Shown here: piece by piece, positions 491-62,730 of the stretch
Layout: each line of letters starts with the position of its first letter
How positions within the stretch are numbered: position 1 is the stretch's first letter
Position numbers and translations under genes: made by a program
Assembly: GCF_016433145.1 (NCBI RefSeq)
Contig: NC_058131.1
Location: forward strand, 602,456,185 to 602,520,184
Direction of reading: 5' to 3'
DNA: 64,000 bases
Source: Gracilinanus agilis
Lineage: Eukaryota
The notes under the pieces: generated by a model
The model's database searches: none
What the model saw: the letters and a program-made list of their open reading frames with translations, nothing else
Told to the model about the DNA's origin: nothing

Positions 491-3180
491 TTCAAGCATA
501 TATCTGGTACCAATACTTTTATTAAAATCATGTTTATCCCTTTAGAAAATTTGGAATATCACCAAAGAAATAACAATCATGAAATTTACTTATATTTTAT
601 GATGCTTTTTCCCCCTCCTCCATCTGTCAATGTCGCTGCTTGAGAACATTTCTAAAGAATGGAGCCATAGCAAGGGTGACTTAATAACTGGTTATCAACC
701 AGATCCCCTTATATTCCTCTTACCTAGAATCAGAACTGAAGTCTGAGGCTTGACTGAATTTCTAGGCAGGAGTTAGGTGGCTCCAGATGTCAGGGTTTTG
801 AGGTAGTACAGGCAGAAGATCACACATGAATCTGATATGAGAGAGCCAGTAGCAGAGGTTGTAGTTTCAGAGAGTAAAAAGAGAATGAGTCAGAACTAGG
901 ATGTGTAACAAAGAACCATAGAAGTTGAGTCCAAAATAGGGGATACAAAGTTAATTAACTTGAATCAGAAGAGCAGGATTCAGAATCTGGAGAACAGACC
1001 AGGTTCAGAACCATAAGATATAAGTGATAGCTAAATTTCGCTTCAAATGAAAACTCAAGCCATTGGTTTAAGAAGAGGTTAAGGTCAAAACAACAAATGA
1101 TCAAAATATGAACAAGGTGGTATTGAACCATCAGAGATGGTCCAATGTCTACTTCCTTTAAGGGGAGCACAGCTCATTGCCCAAGACTTTCTCAGTAGGG
1201 CTGTAATTTCATGTAAGGCACATATGAGACAAGACAGAAATTTGCATCTAGCCAAGATGAAACCTTAGAAATCAGGCATATCTTGACAGTCAGGCAAATG
1301 AGACCTAGATACTGAGCCAAACAATTTAAAGAAAGTCTTCTGGTTATATTGCTATGACACAGCAAATATTGTCTTATTCTTTAGTGTAATGGATAATTAA
1401 TATTACCCAAGGCCATGTTGGGTGGAGTCCAACTAATTTCATTGAGCCACATTTCAAGAGCTTGAAAGGTATGTTCATGTTATTTTCTTGATCCCCCAAA
1501 TTTTCCTTAGCGACTTTTTTGTTTTAGCACCCTCTAGATCTACTGGCACTGTCTATATAACCCTATAATACCCCCATTTGGGCTACTAAACTCTTCTCTT
1601 CATATTTAGGCAAGCCTTAGACTGGGATAAATCCAGGTTCTAGGTAAAGGGATAGAAGGAGCTCTAGATGAGTAGTTAACCAGTAAAACACCTTTGCTGT
1701 GTCTCCTACTATATTTTTGTATCCTTATTCTAGAAGAAGGAAAGTGATCTTTAGCACTGGGGTAGGACTTTGTGGCTTTCTAGTAAAAGAAGTGGGTTTG
1801 ATCATTTAAAAGGTTGGTAAGTTTTAAAGTCCAGTGTTTCTGTCTTTCCCAGACTGAGAGATCAAAATGACTGGCTTCAGACCTGGTTACCTTAAGAATG
1901 CAATCTGACTTCTAGAATTAAGGGGACAAAAGGTTTAATATAGTAAATAAACAAAGGAAGGGAATGGGAGGGAGGGCCAAGGAAATTCCCTAGCACTAAA
2001 AGCTCTAACACTCCTCCTAATCTATGAGATCCTCTAGGACCTGCCTTCTTTGTCTTGCTGTTATCTATCACTCTGAAGGAAAAAGCAACCAACTTCCTGC
2101 TTCAGTCTTCAAGTTCCCTCTTTATTCTGATCTCACATTCTTTTTGATCCCTCTTTTTGGCTTTCCTTCCATAATTAATTTTCTTTGCATCCTGTATCTT
2201 TTTTCAACTCACCTTCTTCTTTTCCTATTCTAATACTAGGTTTAGAATCCATGTCCTTCTCAGAGGCTCTATGACTTTCTACATACCCTCCTGAGTCTCT
2301 TCTCAAATGCCTATATGCCTAATATACCCACCAAACCTCATAGCTTTCCTTGCTTGAGTTCAATCTCTATTGCTGTTGTGACTACCATGGGACTAACTTC
2401 TTTTTAGTCATAATGTGATAGATTTAGAACTCGACAATGACCTTGGAAGCCATTGAGTTCATCCCCCTAATTTTACAGATGAGGAAATTGAATCATAGAG
2501 GGGTTACTGTTCATTTGCCAGGAGATAGCTAGGGCTATGAATTTCCATTGTGGGTAGGAGACAAAACAAATACATATCTCTGATACTATAATACTTCAGG
2601 TCATGTTATTATGATTCTTTTATTGTGTTTGTAGTTTTATTGGGTGTAGGATTTCCATATGGTATGTTGATCTGCTGGTTGTGATTTGATGGAAGCTATT
2701 CGGGTTGTAGTATCTGGTGGGCTTTCTACCCTTGCTATCAAATTCTGGACTCATATTTGTAGGTCCAGCTATTGTCCTCCCAGCCTCAAATCAGCCAGGG
2801 AATAATATCTAAAACCAATCTTAATAGGACAGTCTGTGAACTCTTTAGTCATAGGTACCACTGAAATGAAGATAAATCAGACAGAGTAGAACCACACTAA
2901 TATTGTCTCTTCATTTGTGAATCCCTATCATTTGGAAGAAATTGAAGTCCTCTCTTATAGATAACAATCTAACTCAGGTTTAGATACTTCCAAGATCCTT
3001 TTTATATTAGCATGCTAGTGAATTGGAGCTAAAGCAAATGATAATCTAAAGAGGTTGAGTTGTTTTCTCTAAAGCAGCTTACCTTGCCTTTATTAGTCTG
3101 TAAGTTGGCAGAAAATTCCCCTTGTTTTTGTCCTATGAACAAAACTTATGGTCTCCCTTCATTATCATAAAAAAAAGAAA

Positions 3181-3311
3181 ATCCGGCTTCAGACACTTCC
3201 CAGCTGTGTGACCCTGGGCAAGTCACTTGACCCCCATTGCCTACCCTTACCACTCTTCCACCTATAAGTCAATACACAGAAGTTAAGGGTTTAAAAAATT
3301 TAAAAAAAAAA
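3181..3311 (+). mobile_element. SINE1_Mdo, 5'-truncated, young
   Basis: cagacacttcccagctgtgtgaccctgggcaagtcacttgacccccattgcc...aatacacagaagttaagggtttaaaaa with an A-tail; same family as 28261-28445 and 37653-37832. Confidence 0.9.
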
Positions 3312-12989: not shown

Positions 12990-13245
12990 AAGATAGAATG
13001 CCAGATAGAATGTCAGGCCAGGAGTCAGAAAGACTCATCTTTCTGAGTTCAAATCTGGTCTCAGATATTTAATAGCTGTGTGACCCTGAGCAAGTAAATT
13101 TTACCCTGTTTGATTCAGTTTCCTCATCTTGAAAATGAGCTGGAGAAGGAAATGGCAAATCACTCTAGTATCTTTGCCAAGAAAACCCCAAATGGAGTCA
13201 CAAAGAGTCAAACATGACTGAAACAACTGAACAACAATGACAACA
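12990..13245 (+). mobile_element. Mar1 CORE-RTE SINE
   Basis: ccaggagtcagaagactcatc...ggagaaggaaatggcaaatcactctagtatctttgccaagaaaacccc...actgaacaacaa. Confidence 0.88.
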
Positions 13246-14680: not shown

Positions 14681-15229
14681 TATTAGTACAAGTGTACAAC
14701 TGAAAACTTCCTTTTCCTACTTGATTATGAAAAGCTTTTGAATTAATCATTATCTGTTAACATTCTAAACATGTTTAGTAAAGGACATTTTTGAGGGGGG
14801 ATGGTCTTCGACTTTATTACTCTAGAAAATTACCACATAATATCCTTAGCATTTAGTATAGTTAACTCCTGATCTTCCTTATTACTAAGGATTAGCGTCA
14901 TAAAGTAAATAGTGCACTAGATTGGGAGATAAGAACACTGTCTTTTTCTCTATAGCTTTATTACTTATTACCTCTGTGATATGGAATTATTTATTTTTTC
15001 TGGGTCTCACTGGCTTCATCTATAAAATGAGAAGTTTGCACCAGATATCTCTAAGATCCTTTCCAATTCTCAGTTCATGATTCTATGGCCCTAGACTTAA
15101 TGGAGGTTTGGCACTTACTAAAATCCAATTGGTTTTCTAGAATAAACATGAAAACAAAAGACCCAGGCCCATTTTTTAGGAACCAAATAAGCTCAGCAAA
15201 GAAAGACCCTACAGCTCTTCCCCTTACAG

Positions 15230-16280: not shown

Positions 16281-17095
16281 GAATGCCATATCACATTGTT
16301 GATTCCTTGTGAGTTGAGACCACTAAAATCCTCTAATTATTTTCATATTATTGTCTAGTTATGCCTCCCCCATCCTACATTCTTTTATTTTTGGACATTT
16401 TTTTTAATCCAAGTGTAGGACTTTATACTTATCCCTATTATGTATCATGTTATTAGATTTGGTTCAACATTCTAGCCTGTCAAGCTCTTTTTGGATCCTG
16501 AATTAACCATCCAATAAGTGATTTGTCTCTCTCAATACAAAATGCAAACCTGACAAGGATATTATTTATGCCTTTGACCAAGGCATTGTTAGAAATGTGA
16601 AACAGAAATCATATAAGGAAAAGTCCCCTAAAGCACCCAACTATTGCCCTCCCACTATACTGACATTGACCTACTTACAACCCTTTGAGTCCAGCAATTG
16701 AACAAGTCCTCAATGCAACTATGTTTTCCTAAGTATATATATATATATANNNNNNNNNNNNNNNNNNNNNNNNNNNNNNNNNNNNNNNNNNNNNNNNNNN
16801 NNNNNNNNNNNNNNNNNNNNNNNNNNNNNNNNNNNNNNNNNNNNNNNNNNNNNNNNNNNNNNNNNNNNNNNNNNNNNNNNNNNNNNNNNNNNNNNNNNNN
16901 NNNNNNNNNNNNNNNNNNNNNNNNNNNNNNNNNNNNNNNNNNNNNNNNNNNNNNNNNNNNNNNNNNNNNNNNNNNNNNNNNNNNNNNNNNNNNNNNNNNN
17001 NNNNNNNNNNNNNNNNNNNNNNNNNNNNNNNNNNNNNNNNNNNNNNNNNNNNNNNNNNNNNNNNNNNNNNNNNNNNNNNNNNNNNNNTGTTTTCC

Positions 17096-19394: not shown

Positions 19395-19930
19395 AGTTGG
19401 TTTTTGTTTATTTTGTTAAAATAAGTGACATTGATGTCATTTCATCTTATATCACAGTTTGCAGATATGCCTCCCCTAGCCTATATTCTCATCTCTTACT
19501 GTTTTTTAGCTCTGCTTATAACAAAGAAAAAATAGTTAAACCATACCAACTCACACAGCAACTTTGTCTGAAAATCTGATGGTTTATTCCACCTTCTTCA
19601 CCTGTGCTAACCTACATCTGTACTGAAATTAGGTAGGTGTCTTTCATCTCTTCTCTGGGACCAAGATTGGTAACTATGAATTCTCAGAATTGTTTGTCTT
19701 TTCATATTTTTCTTTTTCCACCTTATTGTATTCATTTTCTGTATTGTCCTGATTCTCTTTACTTCAGCCTACATGGGTTCATACAAGTTTTCCCAGGATC
19801 CTCTGAAGCCCCAGATTTATTATTCCTTATGGCATTATAACATTCATGTACAACAGTTTGTATAGCCAGTCCCCTAGAAATGGGCACCTACTTTCCTGGA
19901 TTTCATTTCTTTGCAATAGCAAAAGAGACT
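19395..19930 (-). mobile_element. Old L1 3'-end fragment
   Basis: Antisense L1 3' region (ggttcatacaagttttcccagg...gccagtcccctagaaatgggcacc...ttctttgcaatagcaaaag). Confidence 0.65.
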
Positions 19931-20339
19931 CTTTTTCCTCCAAAAAAAGGGGGACCTTTTATTCCTCTATTTGACTTCTTTGATGTATATGCTTCAAAGT
20001 GGGACCAGAGCTCTACAGTAGTCTTATCAGTGGGTCAGTCTTCCCATAACCCCTCCAACACTGACCATTTCTGTGCTGTATTATCTGTACCAATTCCCTG
20101 GGTGTGCGCTATTCTTTTAACATGCAATTCTGGAATTTTTCTATTGCAGGTGATAGCTCACCATCCTTTTGGAAAGCTGTTTGTTCCTATCCTGGGTCAT
20201 ATGTCTCTTGGGGAGTATATATTTGTATCAATTCTCTATATAATTGGGATATCAGATTTATTTTCAGAAAATAAACAATTTTGCCAGGGACTACGTTGCC
20301 AGTACTAGAGAAATACAGAGGTGACTCAGAGACAAGCCC

Positions 20340-20600
20340 AGGCTTTGGCTTGTAAATCAGGATGCAGAAAAAAGCGTGCTAACATGGCCCAAGAAAATAA
20401 AATCCAGCCAATGAAACCTCTAAGGGAAACGCTGCGGCTAGTGGTTATGCATAGCTTTACTGCCACCTAGAGGTTTGAGTGGGTTTGTCACCTCTACTGT
20501 CCTGAAATTGAACATGAAATCAATTAGGTCCTAAGTGTGAATCCTCCCTACCAGGTGAGACCTCTCCTGTCATGTTCCTGACGCAATATGTCTTCTGTTT
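20340..20600 (+). promoter_or_regulatory. Promoter/enhancer-like segment
   Basis: Retained CpGs, CCAAT (20408-20412), CTCF-like motif, donor CAG|gtgaga after 20554, and TGACGCAAT (20579-20587). Motif evidence only. Confidence 0.35.
20458..20476 (-). promoter_or_regulatory. CTCF-like motif
   Basis: Minus strand AAACCTCTAGGTGGCAGTA fits the core CCNCNAGRKGGCRS. Confidence 0.55.
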
Positions 20601-20684: not shown

Positions 20685-21244
20685 CAAAACTGGGATGCTT
20701 TTCTATTAGGATCTGTGTCACAAAAAGGCTAGAATCAGGAAATGGGTCCAATCATGCCTCTGTTATCAGTTGTGTGACCATAGGCAAATTACTTAACATT
20801 TACCTCAGCCTCAGTTTCCTCATCTGTAAAATAGCATTTAAAATACTTATAGGACTAACATCACAAAGTTTTAGTGTTAGTAAGGTTGTTTTTATTTGAA
20901 TCCTTTTTAAATTGACCAGTTGGGCAGTACAACACAAACTGATTCTCTCTCTCCAGAAGGGAGAGAGATTTTTATGGCTCTTGAGAAGAAAGACAAGATA
21001 AAACATCATGTATGTAGGTTGCTTTGCTTACTTTAGAGTGCTTTGTAAGTGTAATTATTATTGGTGTTGTGAAGGGTTAAATTTTTGGGGTAGGAGTTTG
21101 AACAAAAGTCAGGAGAGCAAATTCGTGAGTACAAAATGTTTAGATTATTATTAGGAAAATATGGATAGGAAATATAAAGGAAGAAAGTGAGAGTAATCTT
21201 ATAATAGATTATAACTTCTCTTAATAGTGTTAAGTGTTTTTCAC

Positions 21245-21443
21245 TTAACACCGAGGTTTTCTTGGCAAAGACACTGGAGTGGTTTCCCATTTCTTTTTCC
21301 AGTTCATTTTAAAAATGAGGAAGGCACACAAACAGGGTTAAGACTTGCCCAGGGTCACACTGCTAGTAAGTGTCTGTGGCCAGATTTGAACTCAGGAAGA
21401 TGAGACTTCCAGGCTCCAGGTTCACTGTGCCACCTACCTGCCC
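21245..21443 (-). mobile_element. Mar1 CORE-RTE SINE
   Basis: ttcttggcaaagacactggagtgg...gatttgaactcaggaagatgag...ctgtgccacctacctgcc. Confidence 0.88.
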
Positions 21444-21632
21444 ATAATTATTGCAATATTGTTAACATAATATTGTGGTCTCGATAGAAGACAAGGTCAG
21501 GAGGTATGAATTATGGTCCCAGGTATACTAATAACTACTGTCTGGCCATGAGCAAATTACTTTATATCCCTGGGCTTTAGTTTTCTCATCTGTAAAATGG
21601 GTGCTCTGAAAAAAAAAAGATAGGTTAGACTT
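21383..21632 (+). repeat. Left arm of near-perfect inverted duplication
   Basis: Reverse complement of 23260-23520 except for 2 substitutions and the homopolymer length (A10 versus T22). Confidence 0.95.
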
Positions 21633-23259
21633 TATTTATCTAGAAGATTGAGTAGAACCACCTCTGAATCTTTTAAACTTATATTCCAAACCTTCCTGGA
21701 GAGTGGATCTAGCTTCAGTACTCCAGAGGCCAAAGCCTCCATAACTTTAAAAAAAAATTCCTCTAACTAAGATTTCTCTAAATCCCAATGTACTATTTAT
21801 CAAAAGAAAAATCCTTTTTTATCCTTTCAAATTCTTTGCTCTCAATGTCTGCCTTTTCCTCAGAGGTAGATAAGACAACAACAATGAAGGAACAATCCAA
21901 GGTGTAAAGATATGCAACATTTTGAGAATGGTCAACTTGAATTTTAATTCCAACTCTCCCCCTTAGTAGTTACGTGACCTTAGGTATGTTATATCATTTT
22001 TCTGGACTTTGATTTCCTCATTTAGAAAATGAGAAGTAGGAACTAGATAATCTCTAATGTTTCTTTCACTTTTATCCTTCTTTGGTTATTTGAAGGTCCT
22101 GAGAAATTCAGTCATTAAAATCATTTTACCTCCACAGATTACTCTCCAAGGAGCCTCTTCCAGGCTTTCATTCCCAACAGATACCTATTCCAGGAATATT
22201 CCCTGATGGATTTGCACTAAATAATCAGAACCCCTCAGAGTTACAAGGAACTTTAGTGGCATCAAATTCAAGCCAGAATCGATCTCTTTCTCACCTGTAA
22301 CTGGTCATCCAACCACTTTGGGGTAGAAAGGAAGTTTTTGTCTTTGTTTTTGTTTCACATCAAGCCCTCATCTTCCTATCTGCTTCTTTTTTATCCATTG
22401 CTACTAATTCATACCATTGTCATCAAGCCAAACAAGTCTAAACTCCTTTCCACATGACTATCTGCCAAATGCTCGAACATTTTTATCATGATCTCACCTC
22501 TCCCCAACCCAGAATCTTTTCCTCAAATTAAAAATCCTCAGTTACTATAATCCTTTAGTAATTATTCTTCGTAAGAGCAAATACTCAGTGATATAAACTT
22601 TGAGAAAATCTAAGCTCCCTAATAACAATTTGTAAAGGAAGCCAACAGGATATAATAGCTTTAAAGAGGAAGTATAGAATGATCTCTCCACAGGTGGCAT
22701 GGGCATGGTCCTTTCAGAAGACACTGATAAATTGTATTTCACAAATCCCTTTATGCCTTAAGCTTCAATGATTCAGCGACTTTAAGGGTGAAAAATTGGG
22801 CAAATTGTTGTTTTGAATCAATAGGTCAGATGTTGTCACTACATCTTTGACTAGACTAATATTGGAAGGCTGGCAAAAGGCTCAGATTAGGAAGGATAGT
22901 AAGGATTTTTCAAAGGTGGAATTATTATATTTAAACTATCACTTAAGAATATGAAGCATATGCACTAGCAAAAGACAAATTGTGTTTGGAAATTTATCCA
23001 TACATTTTTGTTCCCCTGATTTTCATGGAAATGTTTCATTGCTCTTCCCTGCTGTCTGAATTACATTTGTGTGGTAAGCAGAGCCTGACCTTTCAAATTT
23101 ATTTTTTGGCCTGCTGGGAATTTCTCCAGATTATTGGGAAACTAGTTGGGAGTGCTAAATTTTACATGAGATTATTTATGTCCACACAGATTCAAAGGAT
23201 AGGATTTAAAGCTAGAAGATCTTTAAAATACAGAGTTGGAGAAGATCTTAGAGACCATC

Positions 23260-23520
23260 AAGTCTAACCTATCTTTTTTTTTTTTTTTTTTTTTTAGAGC
23301 ACCCATTTTACAGATGAGAAAACTAAAGCCCAGGGATATAAAGTAATTTGCTCATGGCCAGACAGTAGTTATTAGTATACCTGGGACCATAATTCATACC
23401 TCCTGACCTTGTCTTCTATCGAGACCACAATATTATGTTAACAATATTGCAATAATTATGGGCAGGTAGGTGGCACAGTGAACCTGGAGCCTGGAAGACT
23501 CATCTTCCTGAGTTCAAATC
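23260..23520 (-). repeat. Right arm of near-perfect inverted duplication
   Basis: See 21383-21632; aligned base by base. Confidence 0.95.
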
Positions 23521-24985
23521 TTCAGTTTACAGTTCAGTTTACAGTTCCACTGACAGTGTATTAGTGTCCCCATTTTTCCACATCCCCTTCAACGTTTGTC
23601 ATTTTGGCCTTTTGTCTTTTTAGCCATTCCATTAGGAGGTGATATCTCAGGATTATTTTGACTTACATTTCTCTAGTGAATAATCATTTAGATAATTTTT
23701 TCATATAGTTTTGATTCCTTTTTCCCCCAATTTTCTGTTCATATCTTCTGACCATTTACCATTTGGAGAACATCTCATATTCTTATAAATTTGACAATAT
23801 TCCTTTGTTTATTTTAGGGCTGAAACCTCTATCTGAGAAACTGTCTATGAAATTTCTCCCCTCGATTTACTACTTTCATTCTAATCTTGGCTACATTAGT
23901 TTTATTTGTACAACTTCCCGTTTTAATTTAAGGTATTCAATTCTCAATTTGTATCTCATAACGCTTTCTATCTCTAGTTTTTTTTTATAAATTCTTTTCT
24001 TATCCATAAATCTGATAGATAATATGTTCCCTATTCTAATTTGCTTATGATAGCTCCCTTTATGTCCACGTCATATACATCCATTTTGATCTTATCTTGA
24101 TAAATGGCCTATATCTAGTTTCTGCCAGACTGCTTTCCAGCGTCCTCAACAATCTTTACCAAATAGTGAATTTTTACCCCAAAGCTTAGATTTTTATTTT
24201 AGTCAAAGGTCACTACATACTTTCACAATGATTTATTGTATGTCTGATCCATTCCACTGATCTACTTTTCCTTTTCTTAGTCAGTACCAGATAGTTTTGA
24301 TACCTGCTGTTTTATAATACGATCTTAAAATCTTAAAAAAAAAAAGCTTAAAATCTAGTGCTTCTACATCTTTTTCCTTTGCATTTTTTCATCAATTTCT
24401 TTTTAAAAACCCATTACCTTCTGTCTTAGAATCAATACTAAGTATTTGTTCCAAGGCAAAAGACCAGTAAGAGCAAGGCAATCATAGCTAAGTGACTTGT
24501 CCAAAGTCACATAGCTAAGAAGAGGCTGGATCTAAAATATGACCTACTATTTCTAGGCCAGGATTTCTATCCACTAAGCCCCTTTCATTAATTCCTTTGA
24601 AATTATTGACCTTTTGTTCTTCCAAATTAATTTTGTTATTTTTTCTAGTTCAATAAAATAATTTTTTCATAATTTAATGGAAGAATAACTAATAAAAATA
24701 TAAATTGCCTAGACTGATAGAGGAAAAATAGAATATCCAAATAAAACTATTTTAGAAAAAATAAATTGAACAGGCCATAAATGAACTTACCAAGAAAAAA
24801 GCATCAGAACTAGATGGATTTACTAGTGAATTATACCAAACATTTAAAGATCATCTAATTCCAATATTAAATGAATTATTTAGAACAATTGCTAAATAAG
24901 GAGTCTTGCCAAACTCCTATTATAACACAAATTTGGTGTTGATACTTAAACCAAGAAAAGCAGAAACAGAAAAAAACCTATATCA
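23521..24985 (-). mobile_element. L1 ORF2 fragment with an inverted segment (~24680-24985) and a SINE2-like insertion (~24402-24582)
   Basis: 23521-24680 is antisense late ORF2 (cagttccactgacagtgtattagtgtcccc); 24680-24985 is sense earlier ORF2 (ctagatggatttactagtgaattataccaaacatttaaaga). Confidence 0.8.
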
Positions 24986-26209: not shown

Positions 26210-27260
26210 AAGAGCCCTATGATATCTCCAAGATCAAATACAAAATCCTATTTGGCTCTGAAAGTCCTTCATATCATGGCCCCTTCCTACCTGAACAGTC
26301 TTCTTATAATTTACTCTCCTAAGTGTATTCTGTGATGAATTATAGTCCCAGTTATACTAATAACTACTATCTGGCTTCTTTTCCATTCTTAGAATAAGAC
26401 ATAGCATCTTCTGATTCCATACATTTCCCCTGGATGTCTCTCATACCTGAACTTTTCTCCCTCTTTATGTCTACCATCTGATTTCCCTGGTTTCTTTCAA
26501 ATACCAAGTAAAATCTCTCCTGGAGTGTATAAGTATGTAGGCAGGACTAGCACCTCTGATATGAGGGCTTGCCAAGCCCCTTTCAGAGGTGCTCTTCCAC
26601 CTTTGGTACCCAACTATCACCCAATTTACCTATGGCTCCAAGAAGCTAGCATGTACAGTTGCCACATCCTAGCAAAACTATCTGACAAATGGTCTAAACC
26701 AGATTGAGGGTAGGGGAATGTTTCCTCTAAACATGTTGAGACTTCATAATGGGTAGATGAGAATAATTGTTCCAATAGCCATGAAGGTGACTGAAGTGGA
26801 GAGCTAAGCCATCAAAGATGTCAAGGTCATCCACTACATCCTGGGCCATTTGCATTCTAACTTTTGCCTTACTTCTCAACTTTGATGACTCTGAAACAGA
26901 GAGTGAGGCCAATAACTTTGTTCAACTCTGCCTCACTTAAATCCAATTCACATGTAAGTTGAGATATCACCTTTTCATGCCATTGGCTCTCTTCATAAAC
27001 AAAGGACGAGCAATAAGATTCCTCTTAAGAAGTCTTTCCTGATGCCCTTCTCCAGTTTATTCTTTCTATATTTTGTTTGTATCTAGTTATTGCATGTTGT
27101 CTGCTCCATTCTGTGAGTTTCTAATGGATAGGACCATCATTGTTTTTCTTTATGTTCCCATTGTTTAGAACAGTGCCTGACACTATTATATATATACATA
27201 TATATATGTATATATATTACATGTTATATATAATATTATACTATACACTATTTTGGTTCA
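26210..27260 (+). mobile_element. L2 3' region with an MdoRep1-like insertion (~26745-27015)
   Basis: L2 tail motifs on both sides; the insert has ggtcatccactacatcctgggcc...ctctgcctcacttaaatccaattcac. A related minus-strand piece lies at ~41395-41520. Confidence 0.65.
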
Positions 27261-34454: not shown

Positions 34455-34695
34455 GTTAAATTGTTTTTCAGTAATGTCTGATTCTTTGTGACTCCATTTG
34501 AAGATTTCCTGGCAAAGATACTGAAGTGGTTATCCATTTCCTTCTCCAGCTCATTTTATAGATATGGAGAATGACACAGCCAAGGTTGAGTGACTTGCCC
34601 AGGGTCATACAGCTAAGTGTCTAAGACCAGATTTGAACTCAGAAAGATGATTCTAGGACTGGTGCTCTAAACATTGTTTGACCTTGCTGCCCCAG
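34455..34695 (-). mobile_element. Mar1 CORE-RTE SINE
   Basis: ttcctggcaaagatactgaagtgg...gtgacttgcccagggtcatacagc. Confidence 0.85.
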
Positions 34696-37652: not shown

Positions 37653-37832
37653 TTTTTAAACCCTTAACTTCTGTGTCTTGGCTCCTAGGTGAAAGAGTGG
37701 TAAGGGTGGGCAATGGGGGTCAAGTGACTTGCCCAGGGTCACACAGCTGGGAAGTGTCTGAGGTCAGATTTGAACCTAGGACCTCCTGTCTCTAGGCTTG
37801 GCTCTCAATCCACTGAGCTACCCAGCAGCCCC
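37653..37832 (-). mobile_element. SINE1_Mdo, full length
   Basis: Highly similar to 28261-28445. Confidence 0.93.
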
Positions 37833-40135: not shown

Positions 40136-41050
40136 TCCCGTAGTACAGAGCCCAGCCTTCTCGGAGATTGGACAACAAAGTAGCAGCTGGGGAAAGGGAT
40201 GCTTTCTGGATACTTGAAAAGGCAAACTGTGAAACCTGTGCCTGAAGTTGATGGAGATGCTCTCAGAGCAAGAGGCATCTGCACCAGAAAACTTTGTTGT
40301 TAATCAGAAGTTTAGAGCCTCTTTGATCACTTTCACGGGAATATTTTGGGGACTGTTAATTACCTTAGCTATTTGGGGATCCTTGCAGTCAGTCAGAAAC
40401 ACCTACCTCAAAGGCTCCGAGCTTATTGTAAGTTTGGCAGCAGCCAGCAGCTTCCACTGGAGCAGATCTTAGGCACTGCAGCTGAGGCAATTTGTCCTAT
40501 TATTTTTAGGATAATAGAATGTGTGAGGTGGAGAAGACTTTGAAAGTCATTTAGTTCAGCCTACTCGTTTGACAAATGAGGAAACTGAGGCTCTAGGTGT
40601 TAAAGACACTTGGTCCAGGTCACAAAACAGGGATGTGGCAGGACTGGGACTCAGCCCGAGACTCAAATCCAGGTCTCCTAACTCCTAGTTCAATTTAGGT
40701 CCGGGAAACCTTGTCCAATCATCCAACAACCCTGAGTATTGCCTCCTTCCTCAAACTGCTTCGTATTCATGCATCTGTGTATCTTATAATTGTCTCCCAC
40801 TCAGTGGAATTTAAACTCCTTGAGGGAAGGGACTGTTTTTGATTTTATTCTGATTGTGTAACTTTTGTGGGTGATTAATACATTTTGTCAAATTGAGAAT
40901 GGAAGTAAAAGTGGTCAGACCTATACTTTAGGAAGATGACTTTGGCAGCTGAGTAGAGGATGGATTAGAGATGGGAGACACTTGAGCAGAGAAAACAGCC
41001 ACCAGGTTATTGCAGTAGTAAAGTATGAGATGATGATATTTGTCCTTTTA

Positions 41051-43300: not shown

Positions 43301-43747
43301 NNNNNNNNNNNNNNNNNNNNNNNNNNNNNNNNNNNNNNNNNNNNNNNNNNNNNNNNNNNNNNNNNNNNNNNNNNNNNNNNNNNNNNNNNNNNNNNNNNNN
43401 NNNNNNNNNNNNNNNNNNNNNNNNNNNNNNNNNNNNNNNNNNNNNNNNNNNNNNNNNNNNNNNNNNNNNNNNNNNNNNNNNNNNNNNNNNNNNNNNNNNN
43501 NNNNNNNNNNNNNNNNNNNNNNNNNNNNNNNNNNNNNNNNNNNNNNNNNNNNNNNNNNNNNNNNNNNNNNNNNNNNNNNNNNNNNNNNNNNNNNNNNNNN
43601 NNNNNNNNNNNNNNNNNNNNNNNNNNNNNNNNNNNNNNNNNNNNNNNNNNNNNNNNNNNNNNNNNNNNNNNNNNNNNNNNNNNNNNNNNNNNNNNNNNNN
43701 NNNNNNNNNNNNNNNNNNNNNNNNNNNNNNNNNNNNNNNNNNNNNNN
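43301..43747. other. Assembly gap
   Basis: N run; followed by a CT/CCT-rich tract (43748-43803). Confidence 0.99.
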
Positions 43748-53922: not shown

Positions 53923-54057
53923 NNNNNNNNNNNNNNNNNNNNNNNNNNNNNNNNNNNNNNNNNNNNNNNNNNNNNNNNNNNNNNNNNNNNNNNNNNNNNN
54001 NNNNNNNNNNNNNNNNNNNNNNNNNNNNNNNNNNNNNNNNNNNNNNNNNNNNNNNNN
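53923..54057. other. Assembly gap
   Basis: N run. Confidence 0.99.
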
Positions 54058-55477
54058 AGTCTAAGTTTCCTAACACTCAAGTTTGCTCTTGGTCCACTGG
54101 AACAAAATGAAATCTTGAGAACAAATCTACAAAACGAGACATCCAAACTAGATGGTTTCTAAGGTCCCTTCCAGCTCTGACATTCTATGATTCTATAATT
54201 AATATAGTCAGAGAGACATGAAACACAATTTATTCCCATCTCCCTGTGCAAATGAACCTGAATGTGACAAGCTAGGTTTGATTTCATAAAAACTAACATT
54301 CATTTTTTCCTCTTGAGCAATTTTACCCCTGTGAAATTCAGGCAAAGGATAAACATGTTTACACATGATTCATTTCCACGTAAATCATCAAAATGTGAGA
54401 ACTACTGCTGAGGAAGGTACTTTTTTTTTTCTTCTGTTGTGTAAGCTGAGCTTCTGAGAAACAGGAAGTCAAAGAATTCTAAAGTGTCCAGTTTCAGGTA
54501 AGCAGGGTACAATTCCCTATTGTATTCCCTATCTCAAATTTTTAGGCAGGATCAAGAAAACTGTCCTTGAAAGTGAATTAATTAAGTAGTACTTCAAAGA
54601 CTATCTCCCCATAATGCTTAAAAGTGATCATTAAAAATTGCAGTTCTCAATGAATGTTTTACCTTAACACTAAGCAACTGCATCTTTGGTGATAGGCTGA
54701 TAAAAGCCCAGAATGAATGGTCAAGTGAGTTTTTCACTTTCTGTATAATACAGCAAGATCACTTTTGGGTTGAGTAATATTGTAATTTCATATTTAGTGG
54801 GAATAATATTAAATTTTCCATTGATTTTATGATGGTATTTTCTATTTCGTTGACTATTTCCCTGACCCTACCCACTCCCTTGGAATAGGAACTAATGAGC
54901 TGAGGAATATTTGATAACTTAGGTTTCTCTCTGCTAGAGGTAACACATTTCCTACTACTATGTCCCTTCTCTATGACTTGTAGTACTGTGTTGTATGATT
55001 CCGTGGATATAACTTTTAATAGACATATTACATGATCTGAGAGGGAGCTCAGTGTAGTGGAGAGAATGCTGGAATTAGTCATAAAGACCTAGGATCAAAT
55101 ACTACTTTGGACTCATGCTAGCTGTGATCATGGACTCTTCTTAATGTGCCTCCCAACTTTCCAAAGCTATAAATTATAGAAGAATGCTTCATTTGTATGA
55201 GTGGAAGTGGTTTTAAGCAGAAACTTGCCTACGCTGGCACCATCATAGTTCTAGCCTCTCCCTGCACACACTGCCCCCCTTCCTAATAAAAACTATGTAC
55301 TCATGTTTATGTAGCATCTTATTTAAACTGTTCATCTGTAAAGCTGTTAAAACTTTTAATGTGGGAGCTGGGGTGCTGGGTAGGAAATGATGGCAGTCAT
55401 GGAGCCTATTGCTCAAATGCATGATTTTTGATTTATACAGAGAGTTAGAAAAGACCTCAGAGATTATCTAGAAGTTT

Positions 55478-55889: not shown

Positions 55890-56061
55890 NNNNNNNNNNN
55901 NNNNNNNNNNNNNNNNNNNNNNNNNNNNNNNNNNNNNNNNNNNNNNNNNNNNNNNNNNNNNNNNNNNNNNNNNNNNNNNNNNNNNNNNNNNNNNNNNNNN
56001 NNNNNNNNNNNNNNNNNNNNNNNNNNNNNNNNNNNNNNNNNNNNNNNNNNNNNNNNNNNNN
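55890..56061. other. Assembly gap
   Basis: N run. Confidence 0.99.
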
Positions 56062-59919: not shown

Positions 59920-60365
59920 TGCCATTTGGTCATTTTTCAGACATGTCAGACTCTTCTTGATCCAGTTTGGGGTTTTCCAGGTAGAGATACTAGAGTTGGG
60001 GGCGGGGGTGGGAAGCTAGGTAATTCAGCTGGATTGAAAAACAGACCTGGAGGCAGGAGGTCCTGGGTTCAAATCTGCTCTTAGATACTTCCTAGCTATG
60101 GGATCCTAGGTAAATCACTTAATCCCCATTGCCTCTTACCATTCTTCTGCCTTAGAACCAATACACAATATGGATTCTAAGATGGAAAATAAGGGCTCTT
60201 AGTAATTTGCCATTTCCTTCTCTAGCTCATTTTATAGATGAGGAAACTGAGGCAAACAGGGTCAAATAACTTGCCCAGGTTCACACAGCTAGTAAGAGAC
60301 TGAGGCTAGATTTGAACTCAGGAAGATGACTCCAAACTGGACACTCTATCAACCTTGCTACATAA
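59920..60365 (-). mobile_element. Mar1 SINE split by a plus-strand SINE2-like copy (~60010-60200)
   Basis: The RTE tail gtagagatactagagt resumes as ttgccatttccttctc after the insert. Confidence 0.82.
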
Positions 60366-60934: not shown

Positions 60935-62730
60935 TGGTTTTTCTAAACCCCTTTTACGGTCTTCTCAGCAAAGATTTTGGAGTGGTTTACCACTTCCTTC
61001 TCTAGCTTATTTTCCAGATGAGTAACCAGAGGCAAGCAGGATTAAGTGACTTGACCAGGGTTACATAGCTAGTAAGTTTCTAAGGCTGGATTTGAATTCA
61101 CACAAATGAGTCTTTCTGACTCCAGTCCTGCTCTCTATCCACTGTGCCACCTACCTGCCTATTGAGAGGCACCCTAAGTTCAGACCCTGCCTCTGACTTT
61201 TTATTAGTCAAGTGACCCTGGACAAATCCCTCAGGGCTCTCTAAGACTGAGTTGAACAACAGTTGTTCATTGGGAAAAGGCATTTCTTCATCCCACAGAG
61301 CAGCGAAAACTCAAATTCTGAGCAATCTCTTCACCAATGAAAACAATCACAAAACATCCCACAACTCTGTGAAATAGCTACTGGTGACTGTAGTAACAAA
61401 TATTGCTTTAGAGAGAAAATAGGCTTGGAAGAAGTCATAGGGCTGGTAAGAATAGTAGCTAACATTTATGCAGTGCTTGCTATGAGCTGGGCACTGTAGT
61501 AAGTATTTTACAATTATTATCTCATTTGGTCCCCTCATTATTGTGGGAGAAAGGTGCTGTTATTTTCACCTTCCTTTAACAAACAAAGAAACTGAGGCAG
61601 AGAGGGGTTACAGAAATCACCCAATTATGTAACATAGCCAGTAAATGTCTGAGATTGGATTTGAACTCAGCTTTGTCCTGTCTCCAGGATAAACTCTAGC
61701 CGCTATACCTTTTCCATGGCCCAAGTTTCAGAGCTAGGATTGCCTCAGGTCTTTCCAACCCAAACCAAGTGGTCTTTCCACTGTTCCATATTTTACACAC
61801 TCAGAGAAATAATAATGAAGTCCATGGCTAGCTGCCAGCTAACAAAGAGCAAAAAATTAAAGTCAAAGGTCCCACTCTTCCATTCAGCACTAAAGTTATT
61901 TGACTAGCTGTGTATCTTGGGGAAGTGACATAGCCTCTCTCAGCCTTAATTTCCTTATTTGCAAAAATGGAGATTTGGACTAGATTATTTCTTTTTTAAA
62001 TTTTTATTTCTCAAAACTATTACCTCTATTTTAAAATTGATAATGAGTATCAGTTCCAAGGCAGAAGGGCAGTAAGGGCTAGGAAATTGGGCTTTAATGA
62101 CTTAGCTGAGGGTCACACAGCTATGAAGTGTCTGTGGCCAAATTTGAAGCCAGGATCTCTAGACTTGTCTCTCTATCCAGTAAGTCACAAAACTGCTGCT
62201 CCTAGATTATTTCTAATACCTAGTAAAACACTATAATCATAACTTCCTACAAGAGAATTAGAATGTTTCTCTGCTTTGCTTTTAAGCTTTTAAAGGTCTT
62301 TTCAGCTCTGATTCTAGGAACATCAAAACTTTAAATCTGAAGCTGTTAAAAACAAACTGGATTAAACTAGAAAATATTAATAGCCACTAATTACCCAGAG
62401 ATGAAATCTGCACAAATTGCCAATAAAGTCTTTTTCCACAGAAACCAGTCAGTTGTAGTAGCCCCTTGTGGTAGGAGAACCTAGGTGGTGCAGTGGAGAA
62501 AGCTGAGTCTGGAAATCATATAAATCTGAGTTCAAATTAAGACTCAGACACTTACTGGCTGTATGACCCTGGGGGAGTCACCTCTCTCAGTTACTCCTAT
62601 AAAATGAGGATCTTTATAGCACCTACCTCCCAACTGTTGTTGGGAAGATCAAATGAGATAAGAATAGTAAAGTGCTTAGCATAATGCCTGGCATGTAGTA
62701 AGTGCCAAATAAATGCTAATTATTATTCTT
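60935..62730. mobile_element. SINE cluster: Mar1 (-, ~60935-61160), other CORE-SINEs, MIR (-), SINE2-like (-, ~61995-62200), MIR (+, ~62480-62730)
   Basis: Repeated tRNA heads, CORE motifs and family-specific tails. Confidence 0.75.

What the first reader, a model, noticed from the sequence alone, without database searches (positions are those of the whole stretch)
21383..23520. Recent 1.6-kb inversion flanked by a ~99% identical 250-bp inverted duplication
Seen: 21383-21632 is the reverse complement of 23260-23520, with 2 substitutions and A10 versus T22. The unit is a patchwork of old Mar1 head, unique spacer and old MIR, so it is not two copies of one TE. The Mar1 continues only outside the left arm. 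The MIR3 continues only inside the right arm. Inference: the ancestral order was A-X-B and is now A-X-inverted B-inverted X, as expected from a staggered-break or template-switch inversion. The arm contains overlapping palindromes (caatattgttaacataatattg). If transcribed, the arms could form ~250 bp of dsRNA, an ADAR substrate or circularisation element. A local misassembly is the main alternative.
Basis: partly seen in the sequence, partly recalled or inferred. Interest (0 to 1): 0.7.

Follow-up and report, generated by a model that had tools for sequence, protein, structure and literature searches.

The report
Young inverted duplication flanking flipped spacer
A 250-base stretch of old, dead repeat DNA in this marsupial genome has recently been copied backwards 1.6 kb away, with the DNA in between apparently flipped; it is an ordinary scar of DNA-break repair with no sign of function, and no sequencing reads could be laid to confirm the assembled order.

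Summary
21382-21632 is the reverse complement of 23260-23521, with 2 substitutions and A10 versus T22. It is the only self-match of 95% or more in the 64 kb. The unit is not a transposon. It joins the head of one SINE to the first two-thirds of a second, MIR-type SINE. The first SINE continues only outside the left arm, as at least 8 other copies show. The second continues only inside the right arm, as 3 other copies show. Each arm therefore keeps exactly one ancestral flank.

As assembled, this is a 1.9-kb inversion with one breakpoint duplicated, the known staggered-break or two-template-switch pattern. An exact 12-nt tandem duplication lies on the right outer junction.

Three limits apply:
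- Flipping the spacer gives the same four junctions. Reads shorter than the arms cannot fix its orientation, and the flipped form is a plain inverted templated insertion.
- The second breakpoint could not be verified. The L1 remnant cut at 23522 has no confirmed continuation at 21633.

I found no RNA evidence and no function. This is a new member of a known kind, of low interest.

The parts
21255..21381 (-). This is ancestral flank A.
   Evidence: other copies align without a break across 21381/21382, e.g. 21255-21445 vs 60958-61162, 21255-21420 vs 13187-13018, 21258-21403 vs 34505-34650.
21382..21632 (.). Left arm X (251 nt): SINE head (about 21382-21445), a short linker, then the 5' two-thirds of a MIR-type SINE in sense orientation (at least 21506-21632), with A10 at 21609-21618.
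   Evidence: arm pair. (SINE head; 21506-21546 vs 26335-26375 at 93%; 21539-21598 vs 20771-20832).
21633..23259 (.). Spacer of 1,627 nt between the arms, inverted relative to the inferred ancestral order as assembled. Its left end is a novel junction with X.
   Evidence: 21633-21760 shows no similarity to MIR tails beyond shuffled controls; no Rfam family; no protein-level match.
21926..22080 (.). Another old SINE copy inside the spacer.
   Evidence: nhmmer hits to 60191-60332, 13043-13175, 14988-15070 and others.
23205..23259 (-). 3' tail of the MIR-type SINE, continuous with the right arm. This is the ancestral X-B junction, now inverted.
   Evidence: three other copies (15024-15070, 40525-40570, 54144-54191) align across the arm's inner edge.
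23260..23521 (.). Right arm, the inverted copy of X (262 nt), with T22 at 23274-23295.
   Evidence: five alignments of other SINE copies to this arm all stop at 23520/23521.
23521..23547 (+). Exact 12-nt tandem duplication (2.2 copies of TTCAGTTTACAG) starting on the last base of the right arm. Likely a repair footprint at the novel junction X'|C.
   Evidence: TRF: period 12, 100% matches, score 54.
23522..24330 (-). Flank C: a decayed L1 ORF2 remnant in antisense orientation, cut on its 3' side exactly at the arm end. The identification is weak.
   Evidence: 23704-23808 (minus strand) vs human LINE-1 ORF2p residues 1056-1084, E = 0.22. AT skew -0.24 to -0.30. The rest was recognised by reading only.

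Best explanation
This is a real, evolutionarily young scar of double-strand-break or replication repair in repeat-filled, apparently non-coding DNA of a marsupial. The ancestral order was A-X-B-C, where X joins the head of one SINE to the first two-thirds of a MIR-type SINE. The present order is A-X-inv(B)-inv(X)-C: a segment of about 1.9 kb was inverted and the 251-nt X at one breakpoint was kept in both places. The simplest route has a staggered pair of nicks about 250 nt apart at the X breakpoint and an essentially blunt break at B|C. Fill-in and non-homologous end joining then follow. An equivalent route is two template switches during replication. The exact 12-nt tandem duplication at X'|C would be an end-joining footprint. 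Shown: the repeat, its patchwork make-up, one ancestral flank per arm, and the junction duplication. Inferred: the mechanism, the ancestral B|C adjacency, the age and the absence of function. The age is roughly 1-2 million years from 2 differences in about 250 nt at an assumed neutral rate of 2-3e-9 per site per year. The Poisson range is about 0.2-7 million years, and the estimate is void if the arms have undergone gene conversion.
For: Arms 99.2% identical, and the only self-match of 95% or more in 64 kb. At least 8 other SINE copies align across 21381/82, while all alignments to the right arm stop at 23520/21. Three other MIR-type copies align across the right arm's inner edge. The left arm's inner flank has no MIR-tail similarity above shuffles. 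So neither arm is a simple pasted copy as assembled. An exact 12-nt x 2.2 tandem repeat lies on the outer junction. There are no N runs in or beside the structure. In Ranz et al. 2007 (PMC1885836), 17 of 29 Drosophila inversions carry inverted breakpoint duplications of median 321 bp, and 12 carry the duplication at only one breakpoint. This case has the same geometry and size.
Against: The second breakpoint is unverified: the L1 remnant cut at 23522 should continue in sense orientation from 21633, but PDB, Pfam, composition and within-window comparisons gave nothing. The spacer orientation is the only feature that separates this from an inverted templated insertion. It cannot be fixed by reads shorter than the arms. 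Earlier unchecked notes call this a short-read assembly.
Confidence: 0.55

Rival explanations
1. Inverted, locally templated insertion, with no primary inversion. A break between B and C was patched with a backwards copy of X taken from 1.6 kb upstream, giving A-X-B-inv(X)-C. The spacer then appears flipped for one of two reasons: the assembler could not orient it between 250-nt inverted repeats, or recombination between the arms flipped it in the animal.
For: Flipping the spacer leaves all four double-stranded junctions unchanged; this follows from the geometry. In the flipped form the left copy has both ancestral flanks and the right copy two novel ones, the classic templated-insertion picture. 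The 12-nt tandem duplication at the junction and the homopolymer growth from 10 to 22 in the right copy fit error-prone copying. Earlier unchecked notes on this genome list many inverted local templated insertions of 100-370 nt at distances of 1-2 kb, e.g. s1-153848, and call it a short-read assembly.
Against: The assembled sequence shows the other orientation, and read pairs with inserts longer than the arms would normally fix it. This route needs two steps, or an assembly error, where the inversion model needs one.
Confidence: 0.3
2. Assembly artefact: the genome has one copy of X, and the second arm and its junctions were created by chimeric reads or a mis-join.
For: No independent reads could be laid. 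Only one public run holds the stretch, and it may be the source sample.
Against: The structure lies in uninterrupted sequence far from any N run. The arms differ at 2 sites and by 12 nt of homopolymer, unlike a collapsed or re-used read. Two novel junctions must each have been supported by reads for a contig to pass through them. Nothing else in the window shows near-identical duplication.
Confidence: 0.1
3. A mobile element with 250-nt terminal inverted repeats, or a selected hairpin that yields dsRNA, an ADAR substrate or a circular-RNA driver.
For: There are long, near-perfect inverted arms. If transcribed they would pair.
Against: The arms run on into older SINEs on one side each, so they are not element termini. 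There is no target-site duplication: the flanks at 21372-81 and 23522-31 differ. There are no other copies in the window. There is no Rfam match in the spacer and no RNA run on record.
Confidence: 0.03

Closest known systems
Inversions with inverted breakpoint duplications: the staggered-break model (Ranz et al. 2007, PLoS Biol, PMC1885836)
   Same: Ancestrally single-copy, non-transposon sequence from one breakpoint is present at both ends of the inverted segment in inverted orientation. The duplicate size (251 nt) is close to their median of 321 bp. Only one breakpoint is duplicated, as in 12 of their inversions.
   Different: Here the inverted segment is only about 1.9 kb rather than a chromosomal inversion. 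The host is a marsupial, not Drosophila. The arms are 99% identical, against a mean of about 88% there. The ancestral state was inferred from split SINEs rather than from an outgroup genome.
Locally templated (inverted) insertions made by error-prone break repair or template switching (polymerase-theta end joining, MMBIR/FoSTeS). The mechanism names are from general knowledge. Similar cases in this genome are noted as s1-153848 and others.
   Same: A copy of 250-260 nt of nearby DNA (1.6 kb away) lies in inverted orientation. There is a small exact tandem duplication at a junction and homopolymer slippage in one copy.
   Different: As assembled, the donor copy does not keep both ancestral flanks. 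This would hold only if the spacer were flipped.
Inversions mediated by pre-existing inverted repeats through non-allelic homologous recombination (e.g. Aguado et al. 2014, PMC3961182)
   Same: Inverted repeats flank an invertible segment. Once formed, these arms could support repeated flipping.
   Different: Here the repeat is a product of the event, not two older copies of a repeat. Each arm carries one ancestral flank. The arms are short (about 250 nt).

Membership tests
Staggered-break / two-switch inversion with breakpoint duplication | Inverted copies of the same sequence flank the inverted segment | tested here: met
   21382-21632 vs 23260-23521, 99.2% identical.
Staggered-break / two-switch inversion with breakpoint duplication | The duplicated sequence is ancestrally single-copy local DNA, and each copy keeps exactly one ancestral flank | tested here: met
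   (the SINE is continuous only across 21381/82). (the MIR-type SINE is continuous only across 23259/60).
Staggered-break / two-switch inversion with breakpoint duplication | The two sequences now at the novel junctions (rc of 21633 onward, and 23522 onward) were adjacent before the event | tested here: inconclusive
   The L1 remnant is cut at 23522 (weak). Its continuation at 21633 onward was not detected.
Staggered-break / two-switch inversion with breakpoint duplication | An outgroup or other individuals show a single copy of X and the opposite orientation | not testable with these tools
Inverted locally templated insertion | The donor copy keeps both ancestral flanks and the inserted copy has two novel junctions | tested here: not met
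   Not met as assembled. It would be met if the spacer were flipped, which short reads cannot exclude.
Inverted locally templated insertion | Repair footprints at the junctions (microhomology, filler, small templated duplications) | tested here: inconclusive
   There is an exact 12-nt tandem duplication at 23521-23547. No templated source was found for 21633-21700.
DNA transposon / MITE with terminal inverted repeats | Target-site duplication, arms that are the element's own termini, and other copies | tested here: not met
   There is no direct repeat at the flanks. The arms run on into older SINEs. No other copy is in the window.
Assembly artefact | Independent reads fail to support the two novel junctions or the second copy | not testable with these tools
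One search found one holder run only.

The most novel reading that the evidence does not exclude
The 250-nt arms make the 1.6-kb spacer a naturally invertible (flip-flop) segment that is polymorphic in the population. Alternatively, if the locus lies in an intron, the arms form a long dsRNA stem that is edited or drives back-splicing.
Probability: 0.05. Interest if true: 0.45.

Novelty: new member of a known kind. Interest (0 to 1): 0.2.

Why it matters
If the assembled order is right, this is a clean, young mammalian example of a small inversion created together with its own flanking inverted repeat. Old SINE fragments serve as built-in markers of the ancestral order. Such cases help show that inverted repeats at inversion ends can be products rather than causes of the rearrangement. 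They also add to a set of similar young repair scars noted in this genome. It has no evident bearing on any gene or function. It also illustrates a caveat: between inverted repeats longer than the reads, an inversion with breakpoint duplication and an inverted templated insertion give the same junctions.

Tried and rejected
**Reads.**
- The look-up of sequencing runs found one holder (X1, 0.68 of the sampled words) and two non-holders.
- The Rfam, TRF, PDB and Pfam calls used stretches beside them.
- Closed-machine scripts did touch them: one local self-comparison of the whole window and a base-composition count.

**L1 continuity across the inferred B|C junction.**
- Stop-free pieces of 21624-21963 (plus strand) gave no LINE-1 match in the PDB or in Pfam.
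- On the flank, only 23704-23808 (minus strand) touched ORF2p, at E = 0.22. The other pieces did not.
- nhmmer of the reconstructed junction against the rest of the window found only SINE hits.
- A pairwise alignment with a possible L1 remnant at 19700-20420 was not above shuffles and did not cross the junction.
- Base composition was ambiguous.
- By eye, the region read like consecutive L1 ORF2 parts separated by about 40-50 extra bases. That rests on memory of L1 and is not evidence.

**Other attempts.**
- A search for a template for 21633-21700 within 18-28 kb found only 9-11-mers.
- I did not run the large protein searches. The pieces are too decayed to reach significance, and the answer would not settle real versus artefact.
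- A transposon with terminal inverted repeats and a functional RNA were both rejected.

Full report
**Observation**

The inverted repeat is real.
- The repeat finder reports arms 21382-21618 and 23285-23521 at 99% complementarity, plus a second block across the homopolymer.
- A MAFFT alignment of the left arm with the reverse complement of the right arm gives the limits: left 21382-21632 (251 nt) and right 23260-23521 (262 nt).
- The differences are A/T at 21403, G/A at 21608, and A10 (21609-18) versus T22 (23274-95).
- A mismatch at 21633/23259 is followed by two matching bases, after which similarity ends.
- A self-comparison of the whole window shows this is the only pair at 95% or more. 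The next best are SINE copies at 90-94%.
- The four N runs of the window lie at 16750-17087, 43301-43747, 53923-54057 and 55890-56061, far from the structure.

**What the arms are made of**

A sensitive blastn of 21100-23900 against the window shows that the outer 40-65 nt of each arm are the head of a SINE with many copies in the window.
- For the left arm, these copies align without interruption across the arm's outer edge into 21255-21381. Examples are 21255-21445 vs 60958-61162 and 21255-21420 vs 13187-13018.
- For the right arm, the five alignments all stop at 23520/23521.

The inner part of the arm is the sense strand of a MIR-type SINE.
- 21539-21598 matches another core at 20771-20832, and 21506-21546 matches 26335-26375 at 93%.
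- The tail of this SINE continues from the right arm into the spacer at 23205-23259. Three other copies (15024-15070, 40525-40570, 54144-54191) align across the arm's inner edge.
- The left arm's inner flank, 21633-21760, shows no similarity to four MIR tails beyond shuffled controls: 48 to 250 of 300 shuffles reach the observed score.

Each arm therefore keeps exactly one ancestral flank. The arms are not the ends of a mobile element, and as assembled neither is a simple pasted copy.

**Junctions**

Tandem Repeats Finder finds an exact 12-nt unit, TTCAGTTTACAG, in 2.2 copies at 23521-23547. It starts on the last base of the right arm. The surrounding DNA is very decayed, so exact identity of the two units suggests a young duplication. 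Small duplications of this kind are usual end-joining footprints; that is general knowledge and an inference here.

No template for the first 70 nt of the spacer was found nearby. There is no target-site duplication.

**Second breakpoint**

The right flank, 23522 to about 24330, reads as a decayed L1 ORF2 in antisense orientation.
- Tool support is weak. One 35-aa piece aligns to human ORF2p residues 1056-1084 at E = 0.22.
- The stretch is strongly T-rich, with AT skew of -0.24 to -0.30.
- Counting codons from that match puts the cut at about residue 1150, so the L1 lacks its 3' end. L1 insertions are not normally truncated there, which suggests a later break.

The inversion model predicts that the missing part runs in sense orientation from 21633. 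I could not confirm this.
- There were no PDB or Pfam matches for the pieces.
- No other L1 copy in the window spans the site.
- Composition is ambiguous.

My by-eye impression of L1-like codons there rests on memory and is not counted. The former adjacency of B and C remains untested.

**Reads**

After that I kept those places, and their twin at about 23295-23337, out of every search tool and worked beside them. Closed-machine scripts did touch them: one local self-comparison of the whole window and a base-composition count.

**Explanation**

The assembled order A-X-inv(B)-inv(X)-C is the pattern described by Ranz et al. 2007. They found 17 of 29 Drosophila inversions with inverted duplications of non-repetitive breakpoint sequence, a median size of 321 bp, and 12 with the duplication at only one breakpoint. 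They explained this by staggered breaks, fill-in and end joining (PMC1885836). Two template switches during replication would give the same product.

Two differences in about 250 nt imply an age of the order of 1-2 million years at an assumed 2-3e-9 per site per year. The range is wide, and the estimate fails if the arms were homogenised by gene conversion.

**The main caveat**

Reversing the spacer between the arms leaves all four double-stranded junctions unchanged.
- In the reversed form the left copy has both ancestral flanks and the right copy has two novel junctions. That is a plain inverted templated insertion of X, 1.6 kb downstream.
- Only molecules that span a whole arm can tell the two forms apart.
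- Earlier notes of this scan, which are unchecked, say that the genome is a mouse-opossum short-read assembly. They also list many inverted local templated insertions of similar size and distance, e.g. s1-153848.
- This raises the weight of that rival. Recombination between the arms in the animal could also interconvert the two forms.

**Function**

None is indicated.
- Rfam finds nothing credible in the spacer.
- No RNA run is on record.
- The short palindromes at 21454-21475 are trivial.

The dsRNA, ADAR and circularisation idea is a generic property of any transcribed inverted repeat and has no support here.

**Verdict**

I estimate:
- about 0.85 that this is a real young repair scar;
- about 0.55 that it is an inversion with breakpoint duplication as assembled;
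- about 0.3 that it is an inverted templated insertion with a flipped spacer;
- about 0.1 that it is an artefact.

It is a new member of a known kind, of low interest.

Noticed in passing
window:20596-20691: A compound microsatellite, (TGTT)n followed by a long (TG)n run, lies about 700 nt left of the structure, next to another MIR-type core at 20771-20832.
   Followed up: no
window:24700-24990: On the plus strand, the stretch reads like the N-terminal part of an L1 ORF2 in sense orientation, opposite to the antisense L1 remnant at 23522-24330. The right flank would then be a patchwork of at least two L1 fragments. This is by reading only.
   Followed up: no
window:35142-35504: A 120-aa open frame shows reverse-transcriptase-like motifs of a non-L1 LINE. 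This is by reading only and was not tested.
   Followed up: no
window:17096-17161: A self-complementary (TA/TATG-type) simple repeat directly abuts the N run 16750-17087. The gap therefore sits in a microsatellite.
   Followed up: no
window:28265-28444, 37653-37832 and 3179-3309: Three SINE copies are 91-94% identical to each other. They are the youngest repeats in the window after the arm pair, and give a yardstick for how much younger the arms (99%) are.
   Followed up: partly
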